A program made the position numbers and the translations under genes. Positions 9,571 through 40,784 of a stretch of 64,000 nucleotides of DNA are shown one piece after another (position 1 is the stretch's first letter; each line of letters starts with the position of its first letter). Source of the DNA: Haliotis rufescens (taxonomy: Eukaryota); the NCBI RefSeq assembly GCF_023055435.1, contig NW_025964223.1:24986001-25050000 (forward strand), written 5' to 3'. A model generated the notes under the pieces. That model had not been told where the DNA came from, ran no database searches, and saw nothing but the letters and a program-made list of their open reading frames with translations.

Positions 9571-9714
9571 TGACGTCATAATATCGTGACGTCACAGTTC
9601 AAAGTTCATCACATCGTAGTATTGTTCTGCTAGCCCGCTGGAACAAAGACCGCTCTTGTGTTTTGAGACGTTTCATCAGTAAATTGCTCCACACAGGAAT
9701 CGGACGCCGTCAAG
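9571..9714 (+). promoter_or_regulatory. Putative promoter and non-coding exon 1 of paralog A: two CRE palindromes + DR1
   Basis: TGACGTCA at 9571-9578 and 9587-9594, AGTTCAaAGTTCA at 9596-9608, donor AAG|gtgagc at 9714. The block is conserved in B and C within diverged flanks. Confidence 0.6.
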
Positions 9715-10985
9715 GTGAGCACAAGAGAATACCTGGTCTTTTTAGACTTCCTGTGATTATATTTACCTACTTTACCACACTGAAATCTAAAAAAATGTTT
9801 CAAACCTGTGAGGCGGGAGGCATTGTATTTTACAGACATATATTATTTTTCAACAAACTGTTCAACGCATGTGGTTACATGAAGCGTGATTGTTTGGTAG
9901 TTCTATTGTATGGTTATATAAGAAACAAGACAAAACACGTAGCGATTTTCTTCGCCGTTGGTACTTAGGGACAGTAAAAAATTGTAAGTTGGGGTGATTG
10001 TGTTTTCAGTGAGGCGGTCGGGGATGAAAATCTAAACATTAATGTGTCAGCCGTTTCTGAATCAACGGTCTGATTCATTAATGAGGCCACACCAATTAAT
10101 CTCTGGTTCATAGATACTTATTTATTAATATTTAAGTAAATAAATATTAGCATCCGCCACGATAACCTATTAAATTCTCAAACCTTCCAAAAAGTGTTAA
10201 TTTCAAAACAAACTTTAAACTGATTAAATAATGAATTCGTTTTAACGAGGGCCAACAATGATCCCAGCGCTGTTGTATCTAAAATACGTTCACATAAATT
10301 TACAATCGTTGTATTCCGTTATGGTCACAAGTGTAAGTGTTTCCTTATATATACCTGGGTGCCGTTATACTAAACACCCACAGCGCTACGACTGTCGTAA
10401 GTCTATGTTAAAATGTGGGAGTTACGATCACCTTAGCGCTATAGAGGTCCAAACACATGTACAGTGTTTACAGGGCGAGTAGAACCAAATACCAAGGATT
10501 AAAAATATGGATTGAAAAGTATATTTTATGGCGCTGCACCTCTTTTCTCTAGCAAATCAACAACTTTAACTACTATTAATGGTCTGAAAATACGAAAACA
10601 TAGCGTTAATGATGCTCACGTTTCCATTATAACATATATCTATACTGAGGTATAGTTTTTACACTTGATATGCTTTGAATTTATGCATATGCATGCTTTT
10701 GTGTAATTACATAATAACTCAACACATCATGTGGTTCATTAATTCAGTCACCAAGTTATTTTCTTTTCGGGAGGGTGGTTGGATGTAAACAGCAACATTT
10801 TTTACTGATTGGCGCAAACTATTGCGAAGCGACATGCCACACTCTATAACATATTAATCTACATGCTAACTAGCTTTTATGAATAAAGCATATGTCATAC
10901 ATATTTAACTGATCAAAACATTGTTGATTTTTTTAATAACTGAAACTATTTTTTGAAAACAGTGTGACATCCAGGAAGCTAGGAA

Positions 10986-13228
10986 ATGTCGACAGTCGTA
11001 CCTGCAGCGACACAAAAGGACATCTTGTCCTCGTCGTCCTCGGTCTTGTCCCCTATTTCCTCTCCTGAAAGCATTACTCGCAAAACAAAACAGCCTTCCA
11101 AAGTGAAGACCCGGTTAGACACGCAGCCACACAATGTTGCGTCACGTGAAGATGCAGTAATTAATTCCGAGGACTACCGTTACATCATGTCAACATCGGC
11201 ATCTGACTTAAGTTCCTCTCAATCGTCATCCAAGACTAGTCCTGGGAGACCTAAAGCCAAAAAGCAAGCACGGGTAGATAACTCCATCAAACCTGGAGAC
11301 TACAAATATATCATGGAGACATCGGCGTCTGACTTAAGTTCTTCCCCATCGTCATCCAAGACTAGTCCTCGGAGACCTGAAGCTTCCGCCAAAGAGCCAG
11401 CACGGGTAGATAACTCCATCAAACCTGGAGACTACAAATTTATCATGGAGACATCGGCGTCTGACTTAAGTTCTTCCCCATCGTCATCCAAGACTAGTCC
11501 TCGGAGACCTGAAGCTTCCGCCCAAAAGCCAGCACGGGTAGATAACTCCAACAAACCTGGAGACTCCAAATATATCATGAAGACATCGGCGTCAGACGTG
11601 TCGTCATCTCCATCATGCAAGATTCTTCGTGAATCTGTCGGAGCATCTGCTTCGCCCTCTAGGCGCTCTCACAGCAGTCCTCGTGAATATGAAAGAGGAT
11701 CTGACAAACCAGATGGCAGTTGCTGCACATCACCAACGTCATCTCCATCGCCATACCCAAGGTCTCTTACAGGGTCCAGGGAATCTGTCTTGTCGTCTGA
11801 AATTCTAAGCAGCGTCTCCTCTGATTCTGAGAAAGTATTCGACCCCTTCGCGAAGGACCACCTTCAGCCCAGACTTTCCCCGAGGGAGCCATCTGTGGAC
11901 GTTCATTTCCCAGTCGCTGAAACAGTGTCCGAGGTATCCCTGGCAAACAGGAGCGATGAATCATGGTTTACCGACTCCAGGGAGTCGAACAGTTTCCACC
12001 AGGACGCACTACACATACGTAAGCTGATGCTGGACCTGGCCTGGGTCTGTGACAGGCAACAGCCCATGTCGGACTGGGTGTCCTCTGTTATCGTGTGGGA
12101 TGATGACGGTAAGTGATTCCATCAGTAGTTGGAACATCATCAGAGTAGTATCGAAAGAGAGTGAGTGAGTCGTTTTTAACAATATTCCTGCTTCATCACA
12201 GAGAGGACACCAGAAATAGGCACCACACATTGAACCAACACTACATGGATGAGCTGAAACATTTGTGAATTATATTGTGTATTGTCTTTTCTAGCTTTGC
12301 CATTATTTTTCTAAGTAGCAAATATGTTGATAACGAAGTTACATATGTAGTAGATGTAGTAGACGTAGTAGATATGTTGTAGATTTGATCATTCTTGTTT
12401 CTGTCTCAAAAGTTGCAAGCAACTTGGGTGTGGACTCTCTCCTGATCAGACTGAAGAACCGGTTTCAGGTGAGTCCAGTGATGTCTCTTGTCCATCTCAG
12501 TGATGGCCAGCTTCCTTACAAATACCAAGGCTTGGCAATTTAAAAAAGACAGAATATGTTTTCGCCCATTGCATCATGACATAGCATTTCTTTCTATGAC
12601 AGGCAGAGCCAAACGGTTTTTGGTGATCCAAAACACATTTTATTTCAGGGCTTCCAGAAAACAATACCTTTTTGGTTAAAACTTGAGACTTAATTATCTT
12701 AAACTAAGTTTAAATGCCAGGATTTAGGAGAACGACATATATTATTTCAAAATAATCCCAGAATATCAAATGGTGTGTATATTTCCCCTACCCAATGATA
12801 TTTTCCTTGTTGATTTCATCACTGTAATATCCGCTGAAATATCAACCTACTTTTCTTACCAGAGCACTTGGTGGCGCCTGACAAGGGGGAGGGAGACTCG
12901 GGTCCAGATCCTCAAGAAATCCAGCTCAGCATCCGGAGGCGGCATCAGCGGTGAGTACAGGGGTATTTGTTTAGCTGTTCGACAAGTTTAGAACGCCCCA
13001 TTGAGGCGAATTCGAACGAACGAAACCAAGGATACCTTTGTTGAACAGTAACAACAAATAGTTGAATATTAACATTACGTGTCAATGAAACGTTCTGTTG
13101 TCCTGAAGTTGCATTTCCTGTCTGTAGGTGGAGACGAGGACAAGACACCACATAAAGAGAAGCTGCAGAAGAGAGTGCAGAGGTTCATGTCCCGGTTCTT
13201 CATTTGTGGAGGACCATCACAGGCCTAG
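10986..13228 (+). CDS. Uncharacterised Ser-rich protein, paralog A (about 455 aa); coding exons 10986-12108, 12413-12468, 12863-12950, 13128-13228
   Basis: 1.1-kb ORF ending at G|gtaagt. Three small GT-AG exons join in consistent phases (1, 0, 1) without stops to ...VASNLGVDSLLIRLKNRFQ STWWRLTRGRETRVQILKKSSSASGGGIS GGDEDKTPHKEKLQKRVQRFMSRFFICGGPSQA*. Exons are conserved in 3 copies while introns 1-3 diverge. Confidence 0.75.
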
Positions 13229-14652
13229 ACACAGTCAGTGTTCGGCCCAGACTAAGTGCAGGTGTCTCTATCAGGCCGAGACACAGTGCCGGTGTCTCTG
13301 TCAGGCCCAGACACAGTGCCGGTGTCTCTGTCAGGCCTAGCCACAGTGCCGGTGTCTCTGTCAGGCCCAGACACAGTGCCGGTGTCTCTGTCAGACCGAG
13401 ACACAGTGCCGGTGTCTCTGTCAGGCCCAGACACAGTGCCGGTGTCTCTGTCAGACCGAGACACAGTGCCGGTGTCTATGTCAGGCCCAGACACAGTGCC
13501 GGTGTCTCTATCAGGCCCAGACACAGTGCCGGTGTCTCTGTCAGGCCTAGCCACAGTGCCGGTGTCTCTGTCAGTCCCAGACACAGTGCCGGTGTCTCTG
13601 TCAGTCCCAGACACAGTGCCGGTGTCTCTATCAGGCCGAGACACAGTGCCGGTGTCTCTATCAGGCCTAGCCACAGTGCCGGTGTCTCTGTCAGGCCCAG
13701 GCACAGTGCCGGTGTCTTTGTCAGGCCCAGGCACAGTGCCGGTGTCTCTGTCAGGCCCAGACACAGTGCCGGTGTCTCTGTCAGACCGAGACACAGTGCC
13801 GGTGTCTCTGTCAGGCCCAGACACAGTGCCGGTGTCTCTGTCAGACCGAGACACAGTGCCGGTGTCTATGTCAGGCCCAGACACAGTGCCGGTGTCTCTG
13901 TCAGTCCCAGACACAGTGCCGGTGTCTTTGTCAGGCCCAGACACAGTGCCGGTGTCTCTGTCAGTCCCAGACACAGTGCCGGTGTCTCTGTCAGTCCCAG
14001 ACACAGTGCCGGTGTCTCTATCAGGCCTAGCCACAGTGCCGGTGTCTCTATCAGGCCTAGCCACAGTGCCGGTGTCTCTGTCAGGCCCAGGCACAGTGCC
14101 GGTGTCTTTGTCAGGCCCAGGCACAGTGCCGGTGTCTCTGTCAGGCCCAGACACAGTGCCGGTGTCTCTGTCAGACCGAGACACAGTGCCGGTGTCTCTG
14201 TCAGGCCCAGACACAGTGCCGGTGTCTCTGTCAGACCGAGACACAGTGCCGGTGTCTATGTCAGGCCCAGACACAGTGCCGGTGTCTCTGTCAGTCCCAG
14301 ACACAGTGCCGGTGTCTTTGTCAGGCCCAGGCACAGTGCCGGTGTCTTTGTCAGGCCCAGACAGAGTGCAGGTGTCTTTGTCAGTCCAAGCCACAGTGCC
14401 GGTGTCTCTGTCAGTCCCAGACACAGTGCCGGTGTCTCTATCAGGCCTAGCCACAGTGCCGGTGTCTCTGTCAGGCCGAGACACAGTGCCGGTGTCTCTG
14501 TCAGTCCCAGACACAGTGCAGGTGTCTCTGTCAGGCCGAGACACAGTGCCGGTGTCTCTATCAGTCCCAGACACAGTGCCGGTGTCTCTGTCAGACCGAG
14601 ACACAGTGCCGGTGTCTATGTCAGGCCCAGACACAGTGCCGGTGTCTCTATC
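13220..14652. repeat. 30-bp minisatellite, about 47 copies, 3' of paralog A
   Basis: Unit caggcccagacacagtgccggtgtctctgt. Confidence 0.98.
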
Positions 14653-16540
14653 GTGTAGCTACATCCTGTGTATATTAAATTGACGTGCTTTATGATGTAG
14701 CCACATCCTCTGTATACTAAATGGGCGTGCCTTATCATGTAGCTACATCCTGTGTATATGAAATGTTCGTGCCTTATCGTGGTTATATCCTGTGTATATT
14801 AAATGGGCGTGCCTTATCATGTAGCCACATCCTGTGTATATGAAATGTTCGTGCCTTATCGTGTAGCTACATCCTGTGTATATTAAATGGGCGTGCCTTA
14901 TCATGTAGCTACATCCTGTGTATATTAAATGGTCGTGCCTTATCATGTCGCTACATCCTGTGTAAATTACATGGGCGTGCCTTATCATGTAGGTACATCC
15001 TGTGTATATGAAATAGGCGTGCCTTATCATGTAGCTACATCCTGTGTACATTAAATGGTCGTGCCTTATCATGTCGCTACATCCTGTGTAAATTACATGG
15101 GCGTGCCTTATCATGTAGGTACATCCTGTGTATATGAAATAGGCGTGCCTTATCATGTAGCTACATCATGTGTACATTAAATGGTCGTGCCTTATCATGT
15201 CGCTACATCCTGTGTACATTAAATGGGCGTGCCTTACCATGTAGCGACATCCTGTGTATATTAAATGGTCGTGCCTTATCGTGTAGCTACATCCTGTGTA
15301 TATTAAATGGGTTTGCCTTATCATGTAGCTGCATCCTGTGTCCATTAAATGGTCGTGCCTTATCATGTAGCTACATCCTGTGTATGTTAAATGGGCGTGC
15401 CATATCATGTAGCTACATCCTGTGTATATTAAATGGGCGTGCCATATCATGTAGCTACATCCTGTGTATGTTAAATGGGCGTGCCATATCATGTAGCTAC
15501 ATCCTGTGTATATTAAATGGTCGTGCCTTATCGTGTAGCTACATCCTGTGTATATGAAATGGGCATGCCTTATCATGTAGCTACATCCTGTGTATATTAA
15601 ATGGTCGTGCCTTATCATGTAGCTACATCCTGTGTATATTAAATGGTCTTGCGTTATCACGTAGCTACATCCTGTGTATATTAAATGGTCGTGTTTTATC
15701 ATGTAACTACATACTGTGTATATTAAGTGGTCGTGCTTTATAATTTAGCTACATCAAATGGTTATTTAATGGTCTTGTTTTATCATGTAGCTACACACTG
15801 TGTAAATTAAGTGGTCGTGCCTTATTATGTAGCTACACTCTGTCTATATTAATGGTCGTGCCTTATCATGTAGCTACATCCTGTGTATATTAAATGGTCG
15901 TGCCTTATCATGGAGCTACATCCTGTGTATATGAAATGGGCATGCCTTATCATGTAGCTACATCCTGTGTATATAAAATGGTCTTGCGTCATCACGTAGC
16001 TACATCCTGTGTATATTAAATGGTCGTGTTTTATCATGTAATTTCACACTGCGTATATTAAGTGGTCGTGCTTTATAATTTAGCTACATCAAATGGTTAT
16101 TTAATGGTCTTGTTTTATCATGTAGCTACACACTGTGTAAATTAAGTGGTCGTGCCTTATTATGTAGCTACACTCTGTCTATATTAATGGTCGTGCCTTA
16201 TCATGTAGCAACATCCTGTGTATATTAAATGGTCGTGCCTTATCGTGTAGCTACACTCTGTCTATATTAATGGTCGTGCCTTATCATGTAGCTACATCCT
16301 GTGTATATTAAATGAGCGTGCCTTATCATGTAGCTACATCAAATGTTTTTTTAATGGTCGTGCCTTATCATGTAGCTACACCCTGTGTATATTAATGGTC
16401 GTGCCTTTTCATATAGCTGTAGCTGGTGTTTATCAAATGTTATCTTGTAGCTACATCCGATGCATGTTATTTGGGCGTGTCTCCTCATGTACCTACATCT
16501 CATGTATATTTAGTGGACGTCCGTCTTCATGTAGCCTGTG
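14650..16540. repeat. 42-bp satellite array A
   Basis: Unit tcatgtagctacatcctgtgtatattaaatggtcgtgcctta. Confidence 0.97.
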
Positions 16541-17463
16541 TATCGTGAATAGGGTAATCTATTTACCTTGAGGTTGTGTGCCTGATCCCGTAAATACTAG
16601 TATCATATTACCTGCTTTATTCTGAATGTATTACACATACATTAATTTGTTTTCCAAATGTACCTGTCATGTGGTTTTAAATGGTAATGAAGGGTCTGTT
16701 AAAAAGAGTTATAAAAAAACTTAATAATCAAAAGAGGAAAAAAATTAATTCATGGGTTAAAAAAAAATCAATTGAGTTTAAATGCTTATAAATATAAAAC
16801 TGAAAAATATGAAAATATAGATAAAAAGAGGAATACAAAAGCTTCAAAACATAAATATACTGAAATAAGGGGGGAAAACTAATGCGCGGATAAAAAAATC
16901 AAATTGAGTTGAAATGCTTATAAAAATATAACTAAAATATCTGAAATTATTAATAAAAAACCCATCTTATTTATGAATAAAAAGACCAACAATATAGAAT
17001 ATATTGAAATATACCCTGAACGTATAGTAAGCATAGGGTCACCTAGACTTATTTGTAATCGGTTGTACACCCTATATGAATAGCTTAGAGTGATTTGTCC
17101 ACCTTAGTTGTGGGAGAGATGTAATCCCAACATAATTAGTTGTAAGAGAGTTGTGAACCCTATATTTATAATTTGTTGTGAGAGACATGTTCACCTCGGT
17201 TGTGAGAGAGTTGTCTACCTTAGGGCTGAGAGCGTTGTGCACCGTGGATGATTATACTGTGAAGTAGTTATACTTCTATAATAGTTGTTAGAGAAAAAAG
17301 GAAACTTGGTCTAACTGTAACGGTATTCGGCCACAATCTTTCTTAAGTTCCCGATTGTCAACACAAAATTCAATATGCAATAAAAGTGCTGATGGGCAGA
17401 CGGTGTTATTGTCTTAATTCTGTGATATAATTACACTGCAAGATTCGTTGTCTGCAGTACCAG

Positions 17464-17570: not shown

Positions 17571-17716
17571 CAGATGAAGTGGTAAGTAGAGCACCTCGGT
17601 ACAACACGTGACTATGAAGCAGGTGATTGTATACATCCGATGAGGGAGTTACACGTGTTTATTTGTTTGTTGTTTGACGCCGCACTCAGCAATATTCCAG
17701 CTTAATCCAGCTATAG

Positions 17717-19231: not shown

Positions 19232-19375
19232 TGACGTCATAGTAGCATGACGTCACAGGTCAAAGTTCATCACTTCGTAGTATTGTTCTGCGAGACCGCT
19301 GGCACAAAGGCAGCTCTCCTTTTTTAAGAAGTTTAATCAGTATATTACACCCCGCAGAGATCGGACACCTTCCAG
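19232..19375 (+). promoter_or_regulatory. Putative promoter and non-coding exon 1 of paralog B
   Basis: TGACGTCA at 19232 and 19248, AGGTCAaAGTTCA at 19257-19269, donor CAG|gtaagt at 19375. Confidence 0.6.
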
Positions 19376-19835: not shown

Positions 19836-20422
19836 TCATATACTATACTCCAATACCCCAACACAGACTTACACATGCGCGGGTCCGGATATCTATTTGT
19901 AAGGTTTCTTTCAATGGTGGCAGTAATAAACTTCAAAGATGGTAGAATGCCAGCGATAAGATAGTGTTTATTAATGAAACTTATTTTTTATGACACTGTA
20001 CCTATTTTTCTAGCAAAGCAGGTACATTCGTAATTATAGTTACCTGTAAATCAGAAAATACGAAGACATATACACTCTTTAACATATTAATATGCTGACG
20101 TATAGTTTTCGCACTTGATATGCATTGAACGTATGCATACACATGGTACTTGATTTTGTGTAATCTTTTTTTCCGATTTTGCAACATGTAATTAACTTTT
20201 TTCGGTTCTGATTTTCTTGGGCCAAGACTACACTTTTTACTCACTGACGTAAACTTTGTTATGCAGATGACTTTTTAAAAATCTATGGCCTAACTAAAAT
20301 TTATTAAAATATATCTTACGTAATACAGATTTAATTGCTTGATCAAACCGAGCCGAAAACTGATGTTTTTTTAATTTTCAAATACTATTTTTGAAAACAG
20401 TGTGACATCCAGGGATCCCACA

Positions 20423-22192
20423 ATGTCCTCTGTCGAACTTGCTGAAAGACAGAAGGGCGAAGATGCAGTAATTAATTCCGAGGACTACCGTTACATCATG
20501 TCAACATCGGCGTCTGACTTAAGTTCCTCTCCATCGTCATCCAAGACTAGTCCTCGGAGACCTGAAGCTTCCGCCAAAATGCCAGCACGGGTAGATAACT
20601 CCATCAAACCTGGAGACTACAAATATATCATTGAGACATCGGCGTCAGACGAGTCATCATCTCCATCACGCAAAGGTCTTCGTGAATCTGTTGGAGCATC
20701 TGCTTCACCCTCTAGGAGCTCTCACAGCAGTCCTCGTGAATCTGACAGTGGATCTGACAAACCTGATGACAGATGCTACACTTCACCAACGTCATCTCCA
20801 TTGCCACACCCAAGGTCTCTTACAGGGTCCAGGGAATCTGTCTTGTCGTCTGAAATTCTAAGCAGCGTCTCCTCTGACTCTGAGAAAGTATTCGACCCCT
20901 TCGCGAAGGACCACCTTCAGCCCAGACTTTCTCCGAGGGAGCCATCTGTGGACGTTCATTTCCCAGTCGCTGAAACAGTGTCCGAGGTATCCCTGGCAAA
21001 CAGGAGCGATGAATCGTGGTTTACCGACTCCAGGGAGTCGAACAGTTTCCACCAGGACGCACTACACATACGTAAGCTGATGCTGGACCAGGCCTGGGTC
21101 TCTGACAGGCAACAGCCCATGTCGGACTGGGTGTCCTCTGTTATCGTCTGGGATGATGACGGTAAGTGATTCCATCAGTAGTTGGAACATCATCAGAGAG
21201 TGAGTGAGTGAGTGTTGTTTAATATCAGAAATAGGCATCACACATTGTACCAACATTACATGATGAGCTGAAACATATATATGAATTATGACAGGTATAT
21301 TCACATAAAAGTATTTTCTCTAAGTAGCTTTGCTATCATTTTTTTCTTCCATTGAAGCAAATTTGTTAATAACGAAGTGACAGATATATATATATATATA
21401 TATATAATAAAATAATAAAGATATATATATATATAAGATTCTTGTTTCTGTCTCAAAAGTTGCAAGCAACTTGGGTGTGGACTCTCTCCTGACCAGACTG
21501 AAGAACCGGTTTCAGGTCTGCCCGTGATTTCCGTGTTCTTGTCACTCAGCGACCTCTCATTGCTTCAAGACATACAAGACATCTTTCTTAACGACAAACG
21601 GAACAACTCTAGGGGTCAATTATAGTGAACGCTCCAGTGAAGAATTTCATTTTTGAGGGGTAAAACTGGAAACTTAATTATTTTTAGGCCTTTTCCAAAG
21701 ACTCTGGGGAAACGTTTTTAGAATACTCCCAGAAGAGCCAATGGTCGGCCCCAACTAAGTGATATTTTCCTTGTTGTTTTCGTCATAATGATATCCGCTG
21801 AAATATCAACCTACTTTTCTTACCAGAGCACTTGGTGGCGCCTGACAAGGGGGAGGGAGACTCGGGTCCAGATCCTCAAGAAATCCAGCTCAGCATCCGG
21901 AGGCGGCATCAGCGGTGAGTACAGGGGTATTTGTTTAGCTGTTCGACAAGTTTAGAACGCCCCATTGAGGCGAATTCGAACGAACGAAACCAAGGATACC
22001 TTTGTTGAACAGTAACAGCAAATAGTTGAATATTAACATTACGTGTCAATGAAACGTTCTGTTGTCCTGAAGTTGCGTTTTCTGTCTGTAGGTGGAGACG
22101 AGGACAAGACACCACACAAAGAGAAGATGCAGAAGAGAGTGCAGAGGTTCATGTCCCGGTTCTTCATTTGTGGAGGACCATCACAGGCCTAG
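20423..22192 (+). CDS. Uncharacterised Ser-rich protein, paralog B (about 327 aa); coding exons 20423-21161, 21460-21515, 21827-21914, 22092-22192
   Basis: Same exon sizes (56, 88, 101 nt) and phases as A. The donor after 21515 is degraded (gtctgc versus gtgagt). Confidence 0.68.
21384..21435. repeat. Interrupted (TA)n microsatellite in intron 2 of B (shorter copy 30476-30497 in C)
   Basis: Direct reading. Confidence 0.9.
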
Positions 22193-29515: not shown

Positions 29516-31254
29516 ATGTCCTCTGTCGAACTTGCTGAAAGACAGAAGGGCGAAGATGCAGTAATTAATTCCGAGGACTACCGTTACATCATGTCAACAT
29601 CGGCGTCTGACTTAAGTTCCTCTCCATCGTCATCCAAGACTAGTCCTCGGAGACCTGAAGCTTCCGCCAAAATGCCAGCACGGGTAGATAACTCCATCAA
29701 ACCTGGAGACTACAAATATATCATTGAGACATCGGCGTCAGACGAGTCATCATCTCCATCACGCAAAGGTCTTCGTGAATCTGTTGGAGCATCTGCTTCA
29801 CCCTCTAGGAGCTCTCACAGCAGTCCTCGTGAATCTGACAGTGGATCTGACAAACCTGATGACAGATGCTACACTTCACCAACGTCATCTCCATTGCCAC
29901 ACCCAAGGTCTCTTACAGGGTCCAGGGAATCTGTCTTGTCGTCTGAAATTCTAAGCAGCGTCTCCTCTGACTCTGAGAAAGTATTCGACCCCTTCGCGAA
30001 GGACCACCTTCAGCCCAGACTTTCCCCGAGGGAGCCATCTGTGGACGTTCATTTCCCAGTCGCTGAAACAGTGTCCGAGGTATCCCTGGCAAACAGGAGC
30101 GATGAATCGTGGTTTACCGACTCCAGGGAGTCGAACAGTTTCCACCAGGACGCACTACACATACGTAAGCTGATGCTGGACCAGGCCTGGGTCTCTGACA
30201 GGCAACAGCCCATGTCGGACTGGGTGTCCTCTGTTATCGTCTGGGATGATGACGGTAAGTGATTCCATCAGTAGTTGGAACATCATCAGAGAGTGAGTGA
30301 GTGAGTGTTGTTTAATATCAGAAATAGGCATCACACATTGTACCAACATTACATGATGAGCTGAAACATATATATGAATTATGACAGGTATATTCACATA
30401 AAAGTATTTTCTCTAAGTAGCTTTGCTATCATTTTTTTCTTCCATTGAAGCAAATTTGTTAATAACGAAGTGACAGATATATATATATATATATATAAGA
30501 TTCTTGTTTCTGTCTCAAAAGTTGCAAGCAACTTGGGTGTGGACTCTCTCCTGACCAGACTGAAGAACCGGTTTCAGGTGAGTCCCGTGATTTCCGTGCT
30601 CTTGTCACTCAGCGACTCTCATTGCTTCAAGACATACAAGACATCTTTCTTAACGACAAACGGAACAACTCTAGGGGTCAATTATAGTGAACGCTCCAGT
30701 GAAGAATTTCATTTTTGAGGGGTAAAACTGGAAACTTAATTATTTTTAGGCCTTTTCCAAAGACTCTGGGGAAACGTTTTTAGAATACTCCCAGAAGAGC
30801 CAATGGTCGGCCCCAACTAAGTGATATTTTCCTTGTTGTTTTCGTCATGATGATATCCGCTGAAATATCAACCTACTTTTCTTACCAGAGCACTTGGTGG
30901 CGCCTGACAAGGGGGAGGGAGACTCGGGTCCAGATCCTCAAGAAATCCAGCTCAGCATCCGGAAGCGGCATCAGCGGTGAGTACAGGGGTATTTGTTGAG
31001 CTGTTCGACAAGTTTAGAACGCCCCATTGAGGCGAATTCGAACGAACGAAACCAAGGATACCTTTGTTGAACAGTAACAGCAAATAGTTGAATATTAACA
31101 TTACGTGTCAATGAAACGTTCTGTTGTCCTGAAGTTGCGTTTTCTGTCTGTAGGTGGAGACGAGGACAAGGCACCACACAAAGAGAAGCTGCAGAAGAGA
31201 GTGCAGAGGTTCATGTCCCGGTTCTTCATTTGTGGAGGACCATCACAGGCCTAG
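29516..31254 (+). CDS. Uncharacterised Ser-rich protein, paralog C (about 327 aa); coding exons 29516-30254, 30522-30577, 30889-30976, 31154-31254
   Basis: Near-identical to B, with all splice sites canonical. Confidence 0.75.
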
Positions 31255-32314
31255 ACACAGTCAGTGTTCGGCCCAGACTAAGTGCAGGTGTCTCTATCAG
31301 GCCCAGCCACAGTGCCGGTGTCTCTATCAGGCCCAGACACAGTGCCGGTGTCTCTGTCAGGCCTAGCCACAGTGCCGGTGTCTCTGTCAGTCCCAGACAC
31401 AGTGCCGGTGTCTCTGTCAGGCCGAGACACAGTGCCGGTGTCTCTATCAGGCCCAGACACAGTGCCGGTGTCTCTGTCAGACCGAGACACAGTGCCGGTG
31501 TCTCTGTCAGTCCCAGACACAGTGCCCTTGTCTCTGTCAGTCCCAGACACAGTGCCGGTGTCTCTGTCAGGCCTAGCCACAGTGCCGGTGTCTTTGTCAG
31601 GCCCAGGCACAGTGCCGGTGTCTTTGTCAGGCCCAGACAGAGTGCCGGTGTCTTTGTCAGTCCAAGACACAGTGCCGGTGTCTCTGTCAGTCCCAGACAC
31701 AGTGCGGGTGTCTCTGTCAGGCCGAGACACAGTGCCGGTGTCTCTGTCAGACCGAGACACAGTGCCGGTGTCTCTGTCAGTCCCAGACACTGTGCCGGTG
31801 TCTCTGTCAGGCCCAGACACAGTGCCGGTGTCTCTATCAGTCCCAGACACAGTGCCGGTGTCTCTGTCAGGCCCAGACACTGTGCCGGTGTCTCTGTCAG
31901 ACCGAGACACAGTGCCGGTGTCTCTATCAGGCCTAGCCACAGTGCCGGTGTCTCTGTCAGTCCCAGACACAGTGCAGGTGTCTCTGTCAGGCCCAGACAC
32001 AGTGCCGGTGTCTCTGCCAGGCCCAGACAGAGTGTAGGTGTCTATATCAGGCCCAGACACAGTGCAGGTGTCTATATCAGGCCCAGACACAGTGCAGGTG
32101 TCTATGTCAGGCCCAGACACAGTGCAGGTGTCTCTGTCAGGCCCAGACAGAGTGTAGGTGTCTATATCAGGCCCAGACACAGTGCAGGTGTCTATGTCAG
32201 GCCCAGACACAGTGCAGGTGTCTATGTCAGGCCCAGACACAGTGCAGGTGTCTCTGTCAGGTTCAGATACAGTGCAGTTGACTATGTCAGGCCCAGACAC
32301 AGTGCAAGTGTCCA
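31246..32314. repeat. 30-bp minisatellite, about 35 copies, 3' of paralog C
   Basis: Same unit. Confidence 0.98.
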
Positions 32315-32319: not shown

Positions 32320-35300
32320 GCCTTATCATGTAGCTATCATCCAGTGTAAATATCTTTGACATGCCTTATCATCGCTATATTTTGTGAAACTATTATGGGC
32401 CTGCCTTATTGTGTTTACGCTATTATCGCTATTGTGGGCGTGCCTTATCGTGTCGCTACATCCTGTGTATTCCAAATGGGCGTGCCGTATCATGTAGCTA
32501 CGTTCTTTCTTTTCTGAATAGGCGTGCCTTATCGTGTAGCTACATCGCGTGTATATAAAATGGACGTGCTTTGACATGTAGCTACATCCTGTGTGTATTA
32601 AACAGACGTGCTTTAACATGTAGCTACATCCTGTGTATATTAAAAAGGCGTGCCGTATCATGTAGCTACACTCTGTGTATATTAAAGGGACGTGTTTTAT
32701 CATGTAGCTATATCCTGTGTATATGAAATGGGCGTGCCTTATCATGTCGCTACATCCTGTGTATATTAAATGGGCGTGCCTTATCATGTAGCTGCATCCT
32801 GTGTATATTAAAAGGGCGTGCCTTATCATGTACCTACACTCTGTGTATATGAAATAGGTGTGCCTTATCATGTAGCTACATCCTGTGTATATGAAATGGT
32901 CGTGCTTTATCATGTAGCTGTATTCTGTGTATATGAAATGGGCGTGCCTTATCATGTAGCTAAATCCTGTGTATACTTAATGGTCGTGCTTTATGATGTA
33001 GCTACACCCTGTGTAGATGAAATGGTCGTGCCGTATCATGTAGCTCACTCTGTGTATATTAAATGGTCGTGCCTTATCATGTAGCTACATCCTGTGTATA
33101 TTAAATGGGTGTGCCTTATCATGTAGCTACATCCTGTGTATATTAAATTGGTGTGCCTTATCGCGTAGCTGCATTCTGTGTTTATTAAATGGGTGTGCTT
33201 TATCATGTAGCTACATCCTGTGTATATTAAATGGGTGTGCCTTATGATGTAGCTACATCCTGAGTGTGTATATGAAATCGACGTGCTTTATCATGTAGCT
33301 TACTCTGTGTATATTAAATGGTGGTGCCTTATCGTGTAGCTACATCCTGTGTATATTAAATGGGTGTGCCTTATCGTGTAACTACATCCTGTTTTTATTA
33401 AATGGTCGTGCCTTATCATGAAACTACATCCTGTGTATATGAAATGGACGTGCTTTATCATGTAGCTACATCCTGTGTATATTAAATGGTCGTGCCTTAT
33501 AGTGTAGCTACATCCTGTGTATATTAAATGGCCGTGCTTTATGGTGTAGCTACATCCTGTGAATATCAAATGGTCGTGCCTTATCGTGTAGCTACATCAT
33601 GTGTATATTTTAATGGTCGTGCCTTATCATGTAGCTACATCCTGTGTATATTAAATGGGTGTGCCGTATCGTGTAGCAGCATCCTGTGTATATTCAATGG
33701 TCGCGCCTTATTGTGTAGCTACATCCTGTGTATGTTAAATAGTCGTGCCTTATCATGTAGCTTCATCCTGTGTATATTAAATCGTCGTGCCTTATCATGT
33801 AGCTACATTCTGTGTATATTAAATGGCGTGCCTTATCATGTAGCTACATTCTGTGTATATTAAATGGCGTGCCTTATCATGTAGCTACACCTTGTGTATA
33901 TTAAATGGTCGTGCCTAGTGTAGCTACATCCTGTGTATATTAAATGGCCGTGCTTTATGGTGTAGCTACATCCTGTGAATATCAAATGGTCGTGCCTTAT
34001 CGTGTAGCTACACCCTGTGTATATTTTAATGGTCGTGCCTTATCATGTAGCTACATCCTGTGTATATCAAATGGGTGTGCCGTATCGTGTAGCAGCATCC
34101 TGTGTATATTCAATGGTCGTGCCTTATTGTGTAGCTACATCCTGTGTATATTAAATAGTCGTGCCTTATCATATAGCTACATCCTGTGTATATGAAATTG
34201 GCGTGCCTCATCATGTAGCTACATCCTGTGTATTTTAAATGGACGTGCTTTTTGATGTAGCTACATCCTGTGTATATGAAATGGTCGTGCTTTATGATGT
34301 AGCTACATCCTGTGTTTATCAAATGGTCGTGCCTTATCATGTAGCTACATCCTGTGTAGATTAAATGCACGTGCTTTATGATGTAACTACATCCTGTGTA
34401 TATCAAATGGTCGTGCCTTATCATGTAGCTACATGCTGTGTATATTAAATGGGCGTGCCTTAATCATGTAGCTACATCCTGTGTGTTTGAAATGATCGTG
34501 CCTTATCGTGTCGCTACATCCTGTGTATATGAAATGGGCGTGCCTTATCGTGTAGCTACATCCTGTGTGTTTGAAATGGTCGCGCCTTATCATGTAGCTA
34601 CATCCTGTGTATATGAAATGGGCGTGCCTTATCATGTAGGTACATCCTGTGTATATTAAATGGGCGTGCCTTATCGTGTAGCTACACTCTGTATATATTA
34701 AATGGTCGTGCCTTATCATGTAGCTACACCCTGTGTATATTAAATGGCCGTGCTTTATGATGAAGCTACACACTGTATATATTAAATGGTCGTCCCTTAT
34801 CGTGTTGCAGCATTCTGTGTATATTAAATGGACGTGCTTTATGATGTAGCTACACACTGTGTATATGAAATGGGCGTGCCTTATCATGTAGCTACATCCT
34901 GTGTATATGAAATGGATGTGCTTTATCATGTAGCTGTATTTCGTGTAGATTAAATGGTCGTGCTTTATCATGTAGCTTTATCCTGTGTATATTAAATGGG
35001 TGAGCCTTATCATGTAGCAGCATCCGGTGTATATTAAATGGTCGTGCCTTATCATGTAGCTACATCCTGTGTATATTAAATGGGCGTGCCTTATCATGTA
35101 GCTACATCCTGTTCATATTAAATGGGCGTGCCTTATCATGTAGCTACATCCTGTGTATATGAAATGGTCGTGCCTTATCATGTAGCTACATCCTGTGTAT
35201 ATGAATTTGCTAGTCTTATCATGTAGCAGCATCCTGTGTATATGAAATGGGCGTGCCTTATCATGTAGCTACATCCTGTGTATACTAAATGGACGTGCTT

Positions 35301-38300
35301 TATCATGTAGCTGTACCCCGTGTATATTAAATGGTTGTGCCTTTTTATGTAGCTACATCCTGTGTATATTAAATGGGTGTGCTTTATCATGTAGCTGTAT
35401 CCTGTGTATATGAAATGGGTGTGCCTTATCATGTAGCTACATCCTGTGTATATGAAATGGTCGTGCTTTATCATGAAGCTGTATTCTGTGTATATGAAAT
35501 GGTCGTGCCGTATCATGTAGCTCAATCTGTGTATATTAAATGGTCGTGCCTTATCATGTAGCTACATCCTGTGTATATTAAATGGGTGTGCCTTATCATG
35601 TAGCTACATCCTGTGTATATTAAATTGGTGTGCCTTATCGCGTAGCTGCATTCTGTGTTTATTAAATGGGTGTGCTTTATCATGTAGCTACATCCTGTGT
35701 ATATTAAATGGGTGTGCCTTATGATGTAGCTACATCCTGAGTGTGTATATGAAATCGACGTGCTTTATCATGTAGCTAACTCTGTGTATATTAAATGGTC
35801 GTGCCTTATCGTGTAGCTACATCCTGTGTATATTAAATGGTCGTGCCTTATAGTGTAGCTACATCCTGTGTATATTAAATGGCCGTGCTTTATGGTGTAG
35901 CTACATCCTGTGAATATCAAATGGTCGTGCCTTATCGTGTAGCTACATCATGTGTATATTTTAATGGTCGTGCCTTATCATGTAGCTACATCCTGTGTAT
36001 ATTAAATGGGTGTGCCGTATCGTGTAGCAGCATCCTGTGTATATTCAATGGTCGCGCCTTATTGTGTAGCTACATCCTGTGTATGTTAAATAGTCGTGCC
36101 TTATCATGTAGCTTCATCCTGTGTATATTAAATCGTCGTGCCTTATCATGTAGCTACATTCTGTGTATATCAAATGGCGTGCCTTATCATGTAGCTACAT
36201 TCTGTGTATATTAAATGGCGTGCCTTATCATGTAGCTACACCTTGTGTATATTAAATGGTCGTGCCTAGTGTAGCTACATCCTGTGTATATTAAATGGCC
36301 GTGCTTTATGGTGTAGCTACATCCTGTGAATATCAAATGGTCGTGCCTTATCGTGTAGCTACACCCTGTGTATATTTTAATGGTCGTGCCTTATCATGTA
36401 GCTACATCCTGTGTATATCAAATGGGTGTGCCGTATCGTGTAGCAGCATCCTGTGTATATTCAATGGTCGTGCCTTATTGTGTAGCTACATCCTGTGTAT
36501 ATTAAATAGTCGTGCCTTATCATATAGCTACATCCTGTGTATATTAAATTGGCGTGCCTCATCATGTAGCTACATCCTGTGTATTTTAAATGGACGTGCT
36601 TTTTGATGTAGCTACATCCTGTGTATATGAAATGGTCGTGCTTTATGATGTAGCTACATCCTGTGTTTATCAAATGGTCGTGCCTTATCATGTAGCTACA
36701 TCCTGTGTATATTAAATGCACGTGCTTTATGATGTAACTACATCCTGTGTATATCAAATGGTCGTGCCTTATCATGTAGCTACATGCTGTGTATATTAAA
36801 TGGGCGTGCCTTAATCATGTAGCTACATCCTGTGTGTTTGAAATGATCGTGCCTTATCGTGTCGCTACATCCTGTGTATATGAAATGGGCGTGCCTTATC
36901 GTGTAGCTACATCCTGTGTGTTTGAAATGGTCGCGCCTTATCATGTAGCTACATCCTGTGTATATGAAATGGGCGTGCCTTATCATGTAGGTACATCCTG
37001 TGTATATTAAATGGGCGTGCCTTATCGTGTAGCTACACTCTGTATATATTAAATGGTCGTGCCTTATCATGTAGCTACACCCTGTGTATATTAAATGGCC
37101 GTGCTTTATGATGAAGCTACACACTGTATATATTAAATGGTCGTCCCTTATCGTGTTGCAGCATTCTGTGTATATTAAATGGACGTGCTTTATGATGTAG
37201 CTACACACTGTGTATATGAAATTGGCGTGCCTTATCATGTAGCTACATCCTGTGTATATGAAATGGATGTGCTTTATCATGTAGCTGTATTTCGTGTAGA
37301 TTAAATGGTCGTGCTTTATCATGTAGCTTTATCCTGTGTATATTAAACGGGTGAGCCTTATCATGTAGCAGCATCCGGTGTATATTAAATGGTCGTGCCT
37401 TATCATGTAGCTACATCCTGTGTATATTAAATGGGCGTGCCTTATCATGTAGCTACATCCTGTTCATATTAAATGGGCGTGCCTTATCATGTAGCTACAT
37501 CCTGTGTATATGAAATGGTCGTGCCTTATCATGTAGCTACATCCTGTGTATATGAATTTGCTAGTCTTATCATGTAGCAGCATCCTGTGTATATGAAATG
37601 GGCGTGCCTTATCATGTAGCTACATCCTGTGTATACTAAATGGACGTGCTTTATCATGTAGCTGTACCCCGTGTATATTAAATGGTTGTGCCTTTTTATG
37701 TAGCTACATCCTGTGTATATTAAATGGGTGTGCTTTATCATGTAGCTGTATCCTGTGTATATGAAATGGGTGTGCCTTATCATGTAGCTACATCCTGTGT
37801 ATATGAAATGGTCGTGCTTTATCATGAAGCTGTATTCTGTGTATATGAAATGGTCGTGCCGTATCATGTAGCTCACTCTGTGTATATTAAATGGTCGTGC
37901 CTTATCATGTAGCTACATCCTGTGTATATTAAATGGGTGTGCCTTATCATGTAGCTACATCCTGTGTATATTAAATTGGTGTGCCTTATCGCGTAGCTGC
38001 ATTCTGTGTTTATTAAATGGGTGTGCTTTATCATGTAGCTACATCCTGTGTATATTAAATGGGTGTGCCTTATGATGTAGCTACATCCTGAGTGTGTATA
38101 TGAAATCGACGTGCTTTATCATGTAGCTAACTCTGTGTATATTAAATGGTCGTGCCTTATCGTGTAGCTACATCCTGTGTATATTAAATGGGTGTGCCTT
38201 ATCGTGTAACTACATCCTGTTTTTATTAAATGGTCGTGCCTTATCATGAAACTACATCCTGTGTATATGAAATGGACGTGCTTTATCATGTAGCTACATC

Positions 38301-40275
38301 CTGTGTATATTAAATGGTCGTGCCTTATAGTGTAGCTACATCCTGTGTATATTAAATGGCCGTGCTTTATGGTGTAGCTACATCCTGTGAATATCAAATG
38401 GTCGTGCCTTATCGTGTAGCTACATCATGTGTATATTTTAATGGTCGTGCCTTATCATGTAGCTACATCCTGTGTATATTAAATGGGTGTGCCGTATCGT
38501 GTAGCAGCATCCTGTGTATATTCAATGGTCGTGCCTTATTGTGAAGCTACATCCTGTGTATGTTAAATAGTCGTGCCTTATCATGTAGCTTCATCCTGTG
38601 TATATTAAATCGTCGTGCCTTATCATGTAGCTACATTCTGTGTATATTAAATGGCGTGCCTTATCATGTAGCTACATTCTGTGTATATTAAATGGGCGTG
38701 CCTTATCATGTAGCTACACCTTGTGTATATTAAATGGTCGTGCCTAGTGTAGCTACATCCTGTGTATATTAAATGGCCGTGCTTTATGGTGTAGCTACAT
38801 CCTGTGAATATCAAATGGTCGTGCCTTATCGTGTAGCTACACCCTGTGTATATTTTAATGGTCGTGCCTTATCATGTAGCTACATCCTGTGTATATTAAA
38901 TGGGTGTGCCGTATCGTGTAGCAGCATCCTGTGTATATTCAATGGTCGTGCCTTATTGTGTAGCTACATCCTGTGTATATTAAATAGTCGTGCCTTATCA
39001 TATAGCTACATCCTGTGTATATGAAATTGGCGTGCCTCATCATGTAGCTACATCCTGTGTATTTCAAATGGACGTGCTTTTTGATGTAGCTACATCCTGT
39101 GTATATGAAATGGTCGTGCTTTATGATGTAGCTACATCCTGTGTTTATCAAATGGTCGTGCCTTATCATGTAGCTACATCCTGTGTATATTAAATGCACG
39201 TGCTTTATGATGTAACTACATCCTTTGTATATCAAATGGTCGTGCCTTATCATGTAGCTACATCCTGTGTATATCAAATGGGTGTGCCGTATCGTGTAGC
39301 AGCATCCTGTGTATATTCAATGGTCGTGCCTTATTGTGTAGCTACATCCTGTGTATATTACATAGTCGTGCCTTATCATGTAGCTACATCCTGTGTATAT
39401 TAAATCGTCGTGCCTTATCATGTAGCTACATTCTGTGTATATTAAATGGCGTGCCTTATCATGTAGCTACACCCTGTGTATATTAAATGACGTGCCTTAT
39501 CATGTAGCTACACCCTGTGTATATTAAATGGTCGTGCCTTATAGTGTAGCTACATCCTGTATATATTAAATGGCCGTGCTTTATGGTGTAGCTACATCCT
39601 GTGAATATCAAATGGTCGTGCCTTATCGTGTAGCTACACCCTATGTATATTTTAATGGTCGTGCCTTATCATGTAGCTACATCCTGTGTATATTAAATGG
39701 GTGTGCCGTATCGTGTAGCAGCATCCTGTGTATATTCAATGGTCGTGCCTTATTGTGTAGCTACATCCTGTGTATATTAAATAGTCGTGCCTTATCATGT
39801 AGCTACATCCTGTGTATATTAAATCGTCGTGCCTTATCATGTAGCTACATTCTGTGTATATTAAATGGCGTGCCTTATCATGTAGCTACACCCTGTGTAT
39901 ATTAAATGGCGTGCCTTATCATGTAGCTACACCCTGTGTATATTAAATGGTCGTGCCTTATAGTGTAGCTACATCCTGTGTATATTAAATAGTCGTGCCT
40001 TATCATGTAGCTACATCCTGTGTATATTAAATCGTCGTGCCTTATCATGTAGCTACATTCTGTGTATATTAAATGGCGTGCCTTATCATATAGCTACACC
40101 CTGTGTATATTAAATGGTTATGTTTTATTATAGGTGTATCACATGTATATGAAATGGGTGTACTTTATCATGTAGCTGCATCCTGTGTATAAATGGAAGT
40201 CGTTTTTTTATGTAGGTATATCCAGTATACATGTATGTTAAAGGGGCGTGCGTTTTCATGTAGTTTCATCCAGTG
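32320..40275. repeat. 42-bp satellite array C (about 8 kb, about 190 monomers) with about 2.35-kb higher-order repeat
   Basis: Same unit; variant patterns recur at offset 2351. Confidence 0.97.
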
Positions 40276-40784
40276 TTTTCCAAAGCGGAATGCCTTGCTT
40301 TTGGACCCAACATGTGTATATGTATTTAGCAAATAACCTGCTTCATTCGAAATAGTTTGTACAGATTATATATCTATGTATTTTCCGAATGTGCCTGTCA
40401 TACTATAGTATGTGTCCGTAATTGGTGTTATATAAACAGAGGGAATACAACAGTTTCAAAGCATAACAGCAACATACTTAAACCACGGGGGAAATGCTTG
40501 GATAAAAATCAAATTGAGTTTAAATGTTTAAAAAAAAACACTGGAAAGATCTTAAATTGTGGGGAGAAAAAATCTATATCATTTATAAATAAAAAAATCC
40601 AACAATATAGAATATACTGAATTATACCCTGGTATAGTGTTGAAAGCATACGGTCCTGCGTATTTTATTGAGTCATTGTACATTGATTGTTAGATGAAGG
40701 AACTCCGGAACCTTCGATACCGATGTTGCTGATTTTTAGAAAAATAGAAAAGGAAAGGTTAAGATTGTCTAGCACCTCATGTAA

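What the first reader, a model, noticed from the sequence alone, without database searches (positions are those of the whole stretch)
9571..40600. Unrecognised triplicated gene cassette: twin-CRE promoter + Ser-rich protein + two satellite arrays fused to the stop codon
Seen: three tandem copies of the same architecture. Each has a promoter block, a non-coding exon, a large Ser/Pro-rich exon and three small phase-compatible exons, then a 30-bp array, a 42-bp array and AATAAA signals. The spliced product (455/327/327 aa) has no domain I recognise and no signal peptide. It ends in two basic-aromatic amphipathic segments (RLKNRFQSTWWRLTRGRETRVQIL; KEKLQKRVQRFMSRFFICGG). The ORF track shows only the big exon and misses the spliced C-terminus. 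Inference: a lineage-specific, fast-evolving, membrane-tethered disordered phosphoprotein family, plausibly germline-expressed.
Basis: partly seen in the sequence, partly recalled or inferred. Interest (0 to 1): 0.8.

Follow-up and report, generated by a model that had tools for sequence, protein, structure and literature searches.

The report
Abalone orphan gene with private minisatellites
This is a real, spliced and expressed gene family found only in abalones, for a floppy serine-rich protein of unknown function; each copy has its own promoter module and two minisatellites that start at the stop codon, and recombination between those minisatellites made the middle copy.

Summary
The window is Haliotis rufescens chromosome DNA with three tandem cassettes. 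Each has twin palindromic CREs, a 5'UTR exon, a large Ser-rich exon and three small exons. A 30-bp array follows, its first degenerate unit containing the stop codon, then a 42-bp array and AATAAA. All four predicted splice junctions appear as GT..AG joints in contigs of four likely RNA runs.

The gene is not unrecognised. RefSeq already models copy 1 (455 aa, LOC124112933) and copy 3 (327 aa, LOC124112385) as "uncharacterized protein".

A profile search of 1.84 billion proteins found relatives only in Haliotis (rufescens, cracherodii, rubra, asinina). There is no Pfam domain. AlphaFold gives mean pLDDT 36 with three short C-terminal helical stretches.

- The genome holds five more cassettes 0.83 Mb away and a decayed relic 17.9 Mb away.
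- Both satellites and the promoter module (CRE-N8-CRE plus a DR1-like element) occur nowhere else in 1.33 Gb.
- The middle copy is a copy-3-5'/copy-1-3' recombinant, with the crossover inside the 42-bp array.

Membrane tethering, phosphorylation and germline expression remain untested. This scan noted a stop-codon-born satellite before, at RSAD1 in this genome. Verdict: a real orphan family, moderately interesting.

The parts
9571..9608 (+). Copy 1 promoter module: CRE 9571-9578, CRE 9587-9594 and DR1-like AGTTCAAAGTTCA 9596-9608.
   Evidence: The module occurs 10 times in the 1.33-Gb genome, all at this family's loci.
9648..9714 (+). Copy 1 exon 1 (5'UTR). The 5' end is only a lower bound, taken from the contig's end.
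   Evidence: an X4 contig joins 9714 to 10963 (GT..AG) with 64 letters lying on exon 1.
10964..12108 (+). Copy 1 exon 2. The CDS starts at ATG 10986. It encodes the Ser-rich region with four DYxYIMxTSASD motifs and the conserved block.
   Evidence: 100% identical to XP_046329086.2 residues 1-374.
12413..12468 (+). Copy 1 exon 3 (56 nt).
   Evidence: joints 12108/12413 and 12468/12863 in X2, X3 and X4.
12863..12950 (+). Copy 1 exon 4 (88 nt), encoding the first basic amphipathic segment.
13128..13228 (+). Copy 1 exon 5 CDS, with stop TAG at 13226-13228. It encodes the second basic amphipathic segment and the FFICGG tail.
   Evidence: (joint 12950/13128 in X1, X3, X4).
13220..14649 (+). Copy 1 30-bp minisatellite, 47 units. 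Its degenerate first unit spans the stop codon.
14649..16418 (+). Copy 1 42-bp minisatellite, 42 units. The unit holds the palindrome ATGTAGCTACAT, and about half the units hold ATTAAA.
16952..16981 (+). First AATAAA hexamers after copy 1 (16952 and 16976).
19232..19269 (+). Copy 2 promoter module (CREs at 19232 and 19248, then AGGTCAAAGTTCA).
20401..22192 (+). Copy 2 coding exons: exon 2 at 20401-21161 (ATG 20423), exon 3 at 21460-21515 (donor GTCTGC), exon 4 at 21827-21914, exon 5 at 22092-22192.
22208..23370 (+). Copy 2 30-bp array (39 units).
23493..25946 (+). Copy 2 42-bp array (58 units). The crossover lies at about 23900-24100: copy-3-like before it, copy-1-like after it.
   Evidence: The flank 25947-28205 equals 16419-18676 at 99.4%.
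28327..28364 (+). Copy 3 promoter module.
29494..31254 (+). Copy 3 coding exons: exon 2 at 29494-30254 (ATG 29516), exon 3 at 30522-30577, exon 4 at 30889-30976, exon 5 at 31154-31254.
   Evidence: matches XP_048240201.1, 327 aa.
31270..32312 (+). Copy 3 30-bp array (35 units).
32435..40191 (+). Copy 3 42-bp array (185 units, 7.8 kb). AATAAA follows at 40588.

Best explanation
SHOWN. This is a real, expressed, five-exon protein-coding gene family confined, as far as sampled, to abalones (Haliotis).
- H. rufescens carries eight intact-looking cassettes on one chromosome: three in this window and five 0.83 Mb away. A decayed relic lies 17.9 Mb away.
- Each cassette is a private unit. It has a promoter with two perfect palindromic CREs 8 bp apart next to a DR1-type AG(G/T)TCA-A-AGTTCA element, then a 5'UTR exon and four coding exons.
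- From inside the stop codon onward it carries a 30-bp and then a 42-bp minisatellite.
- The protein (327-455 aa here, 658 aa in H. asinina) has no signal peptide or membrane span and is predicted mostly disordered.
- It carries 2-7 copies of a conserved DYxYIMxTSASD motif, a conserved C-terminal module of about 180 aa with three short helices, and an invariant Cys seven residues from the end.
- The middle copy in the window is a copy-3-5'/copy-1-3' recombinant whose crossover lies in the 42-bp array. The triplication therefore arose from a two-copy state by unequal crossing-over between the satellites.

INFERRED.
- The minisatellites drive the family's copy-number change and concerted evolution. 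Identity between copies 1 and 3 rises from 76-81% at the 5' end to 95-99% next to the arrays.
- They stay linked to the gene because every duplication copies them.
- Transcription is driven by CREB/CREM-type bZIP factors, so it would be cAMP-responsive, and is modulated by a nuclear receptor.
- The protein is an intracellular, multiply phosphorylated scaffold. It would present its repeated motif to a partner while the basic amphipathic C-terminus docks it to a membrane or another acidic surface.
For: Gene model:
- GT..AG joints lie at all four predicted junctions in contigs of X1-X4 (two studies, two organism labels). Introns have zero depth apart from dispersed repeats.
- 28 of 31 variant letters in those contigs are paralog letters, so several copies are expressed.
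- The exons are 100% identical to RefSeq proteins of 455 and 327 aa.

Coding constraint:
- All eight copies keep exon 2 open, with dN/dS 0.15-0.75.
- Orthologues exist in H. cracherodii, H. rubra and H. asinina, with indels in whole codons.

Lineage restriction and lack of a fold:
- Searches found no relative or domain outside Haliotis.
- AlphaFold mean pLDDT is 36, with helices at 208-226, 245-273 and 301-317.

Family census and private satellites:
- The gene copies are listed.
- The 30-bp and 42-bp units match only at the three loci.
- The promoter module matches exactly 10 times in the genome, all at those loci.

Recombinant middle copy:
- The k-mer diagonals switch from copy 3 to copy 1 between about 23900 and 24100.
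- The flanks are 99.4% and 99.7% identical to copy 1 and copy 3 respectively.
- The identity gradient between copies 1 and 3 is.
Against: - The runs are only guessed to be RNA and are Logan contigs, so they give no transcript ends, strand or level.
- There is no protein-level evidence.
- Tissue and stage are unknown.
- CRE and DR1 function rests on sequence conservation alone.
- Whether the arrays are transcribed is unknown: contigs stop at 13236, 8 bases past the stop.
- Intron 3 (82.6%) breaks the simple identity gradient.
- The protein's partner and location are pure inference.
- The relic locus keeps perfect CRE pairs although its coding exons are decayed. This fits constraint on the promoter poorly unless that locus is still transcribed.
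Confidence: 0.6

Rival explanations
1. The two minisatellites are functional parts of the transcript. They would form a multi-kb 3'UTR, or a tandem set of poly(A) sites, that controls mRNA 3'-end choice, stability or localisation, or that yields small RNAs. Selection, not mere co-duplication, would then keep them attached to every copy.
For: - Both satellites are private to the family and are present at all three loci, including the old relic.
- The array starts inside the stop codon in all eight copies.
- No AATAAA lies between the stop and the end of the arrays. The first AATAAA is 0.4-0.55 kb after them.
- About half of the 42-bp units carry ATTAAA.
- All three RNA contigs that reach the 3' end stop at the same base, 13236. 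A graph branch at a repeat would give that pattern.
- Another gene of this genome was noted with a stop-codon-born satellite (s1-818316, not checked).
Against: - Array length differs 10-fold between near-identical copies: 4-47 and 13-185 units.
- The order of the arrays differs at the relic locus.
- The units fold no better than shuffles, with z -1.6 and +0.65.
- ATTAAA is not kept in the relic's units.
- Minisatellites are common in abalone genes anyway (PMC6905558).
Confidence: 0.25
2. One reading: a germline-expressed, membrane-tethered (palmitoylated FFIC tail) disordered phosphoprotein.
For: - The protein has two strongly amphipathic basic segments, and Cys321 is invariant across four Haliotis proteins.
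- It is 21% Ser.
- From general knowledge, CRE pairs are typical of CREM-driven spermatid genes.
Against: - Nothing here bears on tissue, lipidation or localisation.
- There is no hydrophobic anchor.
- CREs are equally typical of somatic cAMP-induced genes.
Confidence: 0.12
3. The cassette is, or derives from, a mobile element or virus that carries satellites. On this reading the ORF is not a host gene.
For: - Homology between copy 1 and copies 2/3 begins abruptly about 10 bp upstream of the CRE pair.
- From general knowledge, satellites carried by mobile elements are known in molluscs.
Against: - No transposon or viral protein was hit in any search.
- There are no terminal inverted repeats.
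- Copies sit only in tandem at three places on one chromosome, not dispersed.
- The gene has spliced introns and orthologues in four species.
Confidence: 0.03

Closest known systems
RefSeq models LOC124112933 (XP_046329086.2, 455 aa) and LOC124112385 (XP_048240201.1, 327 aa) of Haliotis rufescens. Orthologues: XP_046553883.1 (H. rubra) and XP_067676225.1 (H. asinina, auto-named 'platelet binding protein GspB-like').
   Same: They are the same genes. The exons in the window are identical to these proteins.
   Different: The database entries are automatic models with no function, family, promoter or satellite annotation. The 'GspB-like' name reflects serine richness only.
Minisatellite (VNTR) in or next to a gene's 3'UTR, for example the 40-bp VNTR of human SLC6A3/DAT1 (general knowledge). 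In abalone, the 27-bp, 62-copy intronic minisatellite of TSSK1-like (PMC6905558).
   Same: Units of tens of bp, copy number varying strongly between copies, and a position attached to a gene.
   Different: Here there are two different arrays in series, up to 185 units (7.8 kb). The first unit contains the stop codon. Both arrays are private to one gene family and present at all its loci. Transcription of the arrays is not shown.
Tandem gene-in-repeat arrays ('macrosatellites') such as D4Z4/DUX4, CT47 or GAGE in humans (general knowledge).
   Same: Multi-kb units each holding a complete lineage-restricted gene, arranged head to tail, changing in copy number by unequal crossing-over and evolving in concert.
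   Different: There are only 3 and 5 units. Unit length (6.4-12 kb) is set by internal minisatellites, which are themselves the crossover substrate. The proteins share no sequence relation.
CREB/CREM target promoters with full palindromic CREs close to the start site (general knowledge).
   Same: Two perfect TGACGTCA octamers lie within about 80 bp upstream of the first transcribed bases seen. They are conserved in all 10 promoter copies.
   Different: Factor binding and cAMP response were not tested. The adjacent DR1-like element and the fixed 8-bp gap form a module found nowhere else in this genome.

Membership tests
Protein-coding spliced gene (as opposed to a chance ORF or lncRNA) | Introns removed at canonical sites in RNA | tested here: met
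   GT..AG joints at 9714/10963, 12108/12413, 12468/12863 and 12950/13128 in 1-3 runs each. No retrocopy in the genome.
Protein-coding spliced gene (as opposed to a chance ORF or lncRNA) | Reading frame conserved under purifying selection in paralogs and orthologues | tested here: met
   dN/dS is 0.15-0.75 and all 8 copies are open; orthologues are 74-95% identical, with indels in whole codons.
Any curated protein family (Pfam) or solved structure | A match above the curated threshold with at least one domain stretch | tested here: not met
   only a 'Lactococcin' sum-score of 27-28 bits with no single stretch, which is a repeat artefact, and SCAF11-like_C below its cut-off; best PDB E-value 1.5.
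Transposable element or viral cassette | Element-type protein, terminal repeats, dispersed copies | tested here: not met
   no such protein; no terminal inverted repeats; three loci on one chromosome only.
3'UTR minisatellite (VNTR) | Tandem units of 10-100 bp with variable copy number | tested here: met
   30-bp arrays of 4-47 units and 42-bp arrays of 13-185 units across eight paralogs.
3'UTR minisatellite (VNTR) | The array lies inside the mature transcript | tested here: inconclusive
   contigs end at 13236, just past the stop. AATAAA occurs only after the arrays, and ATTAAA within the 42-bp units. The reads tools were exhausted.
CREB/CREM-regulated promoter | Full palindromic CRE near the transcription start, conserved | tested here: met
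   The first transcribed base seen is at or before 9648, and the CREs are at 9571 and 9587.
CREB/CREM-regulated promoter | Factor binding and cAMP inducibility | not testable with these tools
   Needs a reporter assay, ChIP or treated-tissue RNA.
Tail-anchored or lipid-anchored membrane protein | A C-terminal hydrophobic span (tail anchor) | tested here: not met
   maximum Kyte-Doolittle 19-residue mean is 0.71. The C-terminal segments are amphipathic and basic, not hydrophobic.
Tail-anchored or lipid-anchored membrane protein | S-acylation of the conserved Cys | not testable with these tools
   Cys321 is invariant in four species' proteins. The modification itself needs an experiment.
Tandem gene array evolving by unequal crossing-over | A recombinant unit with flanks from two different parental units | tested here: met
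   copy 2 equals copy 3 up to about 23900 and equals copy 1 from about 24100, including the 2.26-kb flank (99.4%).

The most novel reading that the evidence does not exclude
A gene family and two satellites have co-evolved as one unit across abalone evolution. The 30-bp array was born from the stop-codon region, and both arrays are transcribed as a giant repetitive 3'UTR with a selected role in 3'-end choice, RNA localisation or small-RNA production. Stop-codon-seeded satellites would then be a recurrent way of building 3'UTRs in this genome (a second case was noted at RSAD1).
Probability: 0.2. Interest if true: 0.65.

Novelty: new member of a known kind. Interest (0 to 1): 0.4.

Why it matters
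This is a clean natural example of three things at once.
- A taxonomically restricted orphan gene family has a conserved, family-private promoter module.
- Minisatellites begin in a stop codon and stay attached to every paralog.
- A new gene copy can be traced to an unequal crossover inside such a minisatellite.

If the arrays prove to be transcribed and conserved in other abalones, the locus would allow a test of whether gene-attached satellites have function or only drive duplication. The CRE pair also makes the family a candidate read-out of cAMP signalling, which general knowledge links to abalone larval settlement. That link is speculative.

Tried and rejected
Searches that found nothing useful:
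- Pfam on the big exons and on four full-length database proteins. The Lactococcin score is a sum over repeats with no domain stretch, and SCAF11-like_C is below its threshold.
- ESM Atlas, whole protein and C-terminal half: no usable hit.
- PDB profile search: nothing.
- AlphaFold with a 4-sequence alignment: pLDDT 36, so no fold search was worth running.
- Rfam at gathering threshold on the whole window: 0 hits.
- Terminal inverted repeats around the cassettes: none.
- RNA folding of both array units: not better than shuffles.
- Papers naming the LOC ids: none.

I therefore could not fetch the H. rubra or H. cracherodii loci to see whether their genes carry the arrays.
I corrected the pattern search and resent it.
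- Two BLAST attempts to place the crossover failed because HSPs merged across the arrays. A k-mer diagonal count replaced them.

- I did not build, type or search a joined spliced model from the window. All window queries were single exons by reference.
- Full-length comparisons used only database proteins returned by the tools, by id.
Full report

Yes. Tandem Repeats Finder reports three 30-bp arrays (13244-14649, 22208-23370, 31270-32312). Each is followed by a 42-bp array (14649-16418, 23493-25946, 32435-40191; 42, 58 and 185 units).

With the arrays masked, self-BLAST shows copy 2 (from 19110) and copy 3 (from 28205) to be 99.7% identical. Copy 1 matches them only in a promoter block (9562-9765, 81%) and around the exons (11148-12149, 12391-12482, 12796-13243; 92-98%).

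TGACGTCA occurs 9 times in the window against 0.8 expected. Six of these form three pairs with an 8-bp gap at 9571/9587, 19232/19248 and 28327/28343.

**2. Is the gene model real?**

I laid Logan contigs of four runs (X1-X4; two studies, two organism labels; recorded only as 'RNA?') on 9500-13243.
- 9714/10963 in X4
- 12108/12413 in X2, X3 and X4
- 12468/12863 in X2, X3 and X4
- 12950/13128 in X1, X3 and X4

Intron bins have zero depth except where dispersed repeats lie. That pattern, and the absence of any intronless copy in the genome, argue that these are cDNA-derived contigs.

Minor forms were also seen:
- a skip of exon 3 (12108/12863, one X4 contig with a short side)
- an alternative 5' exon ending at 10647 (X3, depth 2.8)
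- two non-GT..AG 'skips' that are simply the shorter repeat number of the paralogs

Of 31 variant letters in the contigs, 28 are the letters of paralogs at the homologous place. Several family members are therefore expressed.

**3. Identity of the genome and the gene**

I searched the big exon alone. It hit four proteins, all from Haliotis. Cluster look-up and exon-wise tblastn gave these results:
- Copy 1 is XP_046329086.2 (LOC124112933, 455 aa).
- Copy 3 is XP_048240201.1 (LOC124112385, 327 aa) of Haliotis rufescens.
- Identity is 100% in every exon apart from residues split by splice junctions.

The entries are only 'uncharacterized protein'.

Exon lengths add up:
- Copy 1: 1123 + 56 + 88 + 101 nt = 456 codons.
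- Copy 3: 739 + 56 + 88 + 101 nt = 328 codons.

Copy 2 has the same lengths, but its exon-3 donor reads GTCTGC where copies 1 and 3 read GTGAGT. I found no database protein that matches it.

Full-length work used database proteins by id.

**4. Relatives and fold**

I aligned four Haliotis proteins and searched the profile with HMMER against 1.84 billion representatives. It found two proteins, both Haliotis. The new one is a 658-aa H. asinina protein with seven N-terminal repeats.

No other search gave a hit:
- Pfam gives nothing valid.
- PDB gives nothing.
- The ESM Atlas gives nothing.

AlphaFold gives mean pLDDT 36, with short helices at 208-226, 245-273 and 301-317.

The protein is 21% Ser and has GRAVY -0.8. 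It has no hydrophobic span (maximum 19-residue Kyte-Doolittle mean 0.71).

The conserved short motif D-Y-x-Y-I-M-x-T-S-A-S-D occurs:
- 2 times in the 327-aa form and in H. rubra
- 4 times in copy 1
- 7 times in H. asinina

The last 180 residues are about 85% conserved between H. rufescens and H. rubra, and Cys321 is invariant. Pairwise dN/dS on the alignable part of exon 2 in eight paralogs is 0.15-0.75.

The protein is therefore genus-restricted and disordered. Its repeat number is variable, but it is not uniformly fast-evolving.

**5. The family in the genome**

The window is C445:24986001-25050000. A six-frame search with exon 2 found five more copies at 24.148-24.177 Mb on the same chromosome and a weak hit at 7.129 Mb.

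I fetched the second cluster. It holds five cassettes 6.4-7.3 kb apart. Each has all four coding exons, a 30-bp array starting about 6-15 bp after the stop (4-20 units) and a 42-bp array (13-23 units).

The 7.13-Mb locus is a relic:
- It has an exon-2-like ORF with two motifs that lacks the conserved block.
- Its exons 4 and 5 are each shifted by one base relative to the window copies, with a stop codon in the shifted frame. They could also be homopolymer errors.
- It has two promoter modules.
- It has diverged 41/42-bp and 30-bp arrays (71-78% identity) in a different order.

DNA searches with 240-252 bp of each array matched only these three loci, with the caveat that only the best candidates are scored. 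The pattern TGACGTCA-N8-TGACGTCA-N-AGKTCAAAG matches 10 times in 1.33 Gb, all on the + strand at these loci, and 0 times for the reversed control.

Promoter, gene and both satellites are therefore private to one family. Next to the second CRE lies AGGTCA-A-AGTTCA (AGTTCA-A-AGTTCA in copy 1 and the relic). This has the form of a DR1 nuclear-receptor element. That is a direct reading plus general knowledge, and binding was not tested.

**6. Relation of array and stop codon**

The copy 1 CDS ends ...CCA TCA CAG GCC TAG at 13226-13228. The string CAGGCCTAGACACAGT differs from the array unit's CAGGCCCAGACACAGT by the single C>T that makes the stop. The first, degenerate unit therefore spans the last codons.

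The relic keeps CAGGCCTAG but is followed by other sequence.

The first AATAAA comes 0.4-0.55 kb after the arrays. No AATAAA lies inside them. About half of the 42-bp units contain ATTAAA.

All RNA contigs that reach the 3' end stop at 13236. This is what a de Bruijn branch at a repeat would give, but it does not show how far transcripts run. Whether the arrays are 3'UTR is open.

The units fold no better than shuffles.

**7. How the triplication arose**

The flank after copy 1's arrays (16419-18676) equals the flank after copy 2's arrays (25947-28205) at 99.4%. Copy 2's gene equals copy 3's at 99.7%.

Exact 45-mer diagonals show copy 2's arrays tracking copy 3 up to about 23900. From about 24100 they track copy 1.

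This is the product expected from an unequal crossover between copy 3's and copy 1's 42-bp arrays in a two-copy ancestor.

Copy 1 against copy 3 identity, by segment:

| Segment | Identity |
|---|---|
| Exon 1 | 81% |
| Intron 1 | 76% |
| Alignable exon 2 | 95% |
| Exons 3-5 | 98-99% |
| Intron 4 | 97.7% |
| Intron 3 | 82.6% |

The rise towards the arrays is consistent with homogenisation spreading from them. Intron 3 is an exception.

Window copies 2 and 3 are closer to cluster-2 copies (dS 0.015-0.03) than to copy 1 (dS about 0.075).

**8. Most likely working**

Shown:
- a real, spliced, expressed, Haliotis-only gene family in tandem cassettes
- a recombinant middle copy

Inferred:
- The minisatellites act as recombination substrate. 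This explains both the copy-number growth and their unbroken linkage to the gene.
- The promoter is read by CREB/CREM-type bZIP factors and a nuclear receptor.
- The protein is an intracellular disordered scaffold. Its repeated motif recruits a partner, and its basic amphipathic C-terminus docks it to a membrane or other acidic surface.

**9. Context and novelty**

Gene-attached minisatellites are common in abalone. One example is a 27-bp, 62-unit array in an intron of TSSK1-like (PMC6905558). This scan noted another stop-codon-born satellite at RSAD1 in the same genome (s1-818316, not checked by me).

The finding is thus a new, well-resolved member of known kinds: an orphan tandem gene family, VNTR-bearing genes and unequal-crossover duplication. 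It is not a new kind.

The unusual points are that two satellites and a promoter module are private to the family, and that they persist at all loci.

Noticed in passing
window 10382-10441 (intron 1 of copy 1): A piece of about 60 nt has contig depth of 7,000-20,000 in all four runs. It shows 'goes back ~53' joints, and the loose ends on its two sides are reverse complements of each other. It looks like a dispersed fold-back or SINE-like repeat that is very abundant in RNA.
   Followed up: no
window 12125-12249 and 9518-9551: Two further short stretches with very high contig depth (about 530-1650), in intron 2 and just upstream of the promoter. They are probably fragments of dispersed repeats.
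   Followed up: no
window 21516-21521 versus 30578-30583 and 12469-12474: Copy 2's exon-3 splice donor reads GTCTGC where copies 1 and 3 read GTGAGT. The youngest copy may splice poorly, and I found no database protein matching it.
   Followed up: partly
window 18104-18111 and 27633-27640: A single extra perfect CRE (TGACGTCA) sits in each inter-cassette spacer, about 1.1 kb and 0.7 kb upstream of the twin CREs of copies 2 and 3.
   Followed up: no
window 5347-7304: A 39-bp minisatellite of 50 units at 95% identity lies upstream of copy 1. It is open in two frames, unrelated in sequence to the 30-bp and 42-bp units, and its source gene was not examined.
   Followed up: no
G000:C445:7126285-7145000 (L016-L018): A relic locus of the family. 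It has two perfect promoter modules 7.3 kb apart, a truncated exon-2-like ORF and exons 4/5 each shifted by one base. It also has diverged 41/42-bp arrays organised in 82-, 120- and 122-bp higher-order units, interleaved with two 30-bp arrays.
   Followed up: partly
window 41259-41806 and 40822-40977: A 119-bp x 4.6 array and a 24-bp x 6.5 array lie just downstream of copy 3's cassette. The spacer sequence after copy 3 (40429-40868) is only 76-80% like the spacers after copies 1 and 2.
   Followed up: no
window 10647/10961: One low-depth X3 contig joins 10647 to 10961 with GT..AG ends. This suggests an alternative first exon inside intron 1 of copy 1.
   Followed up: no
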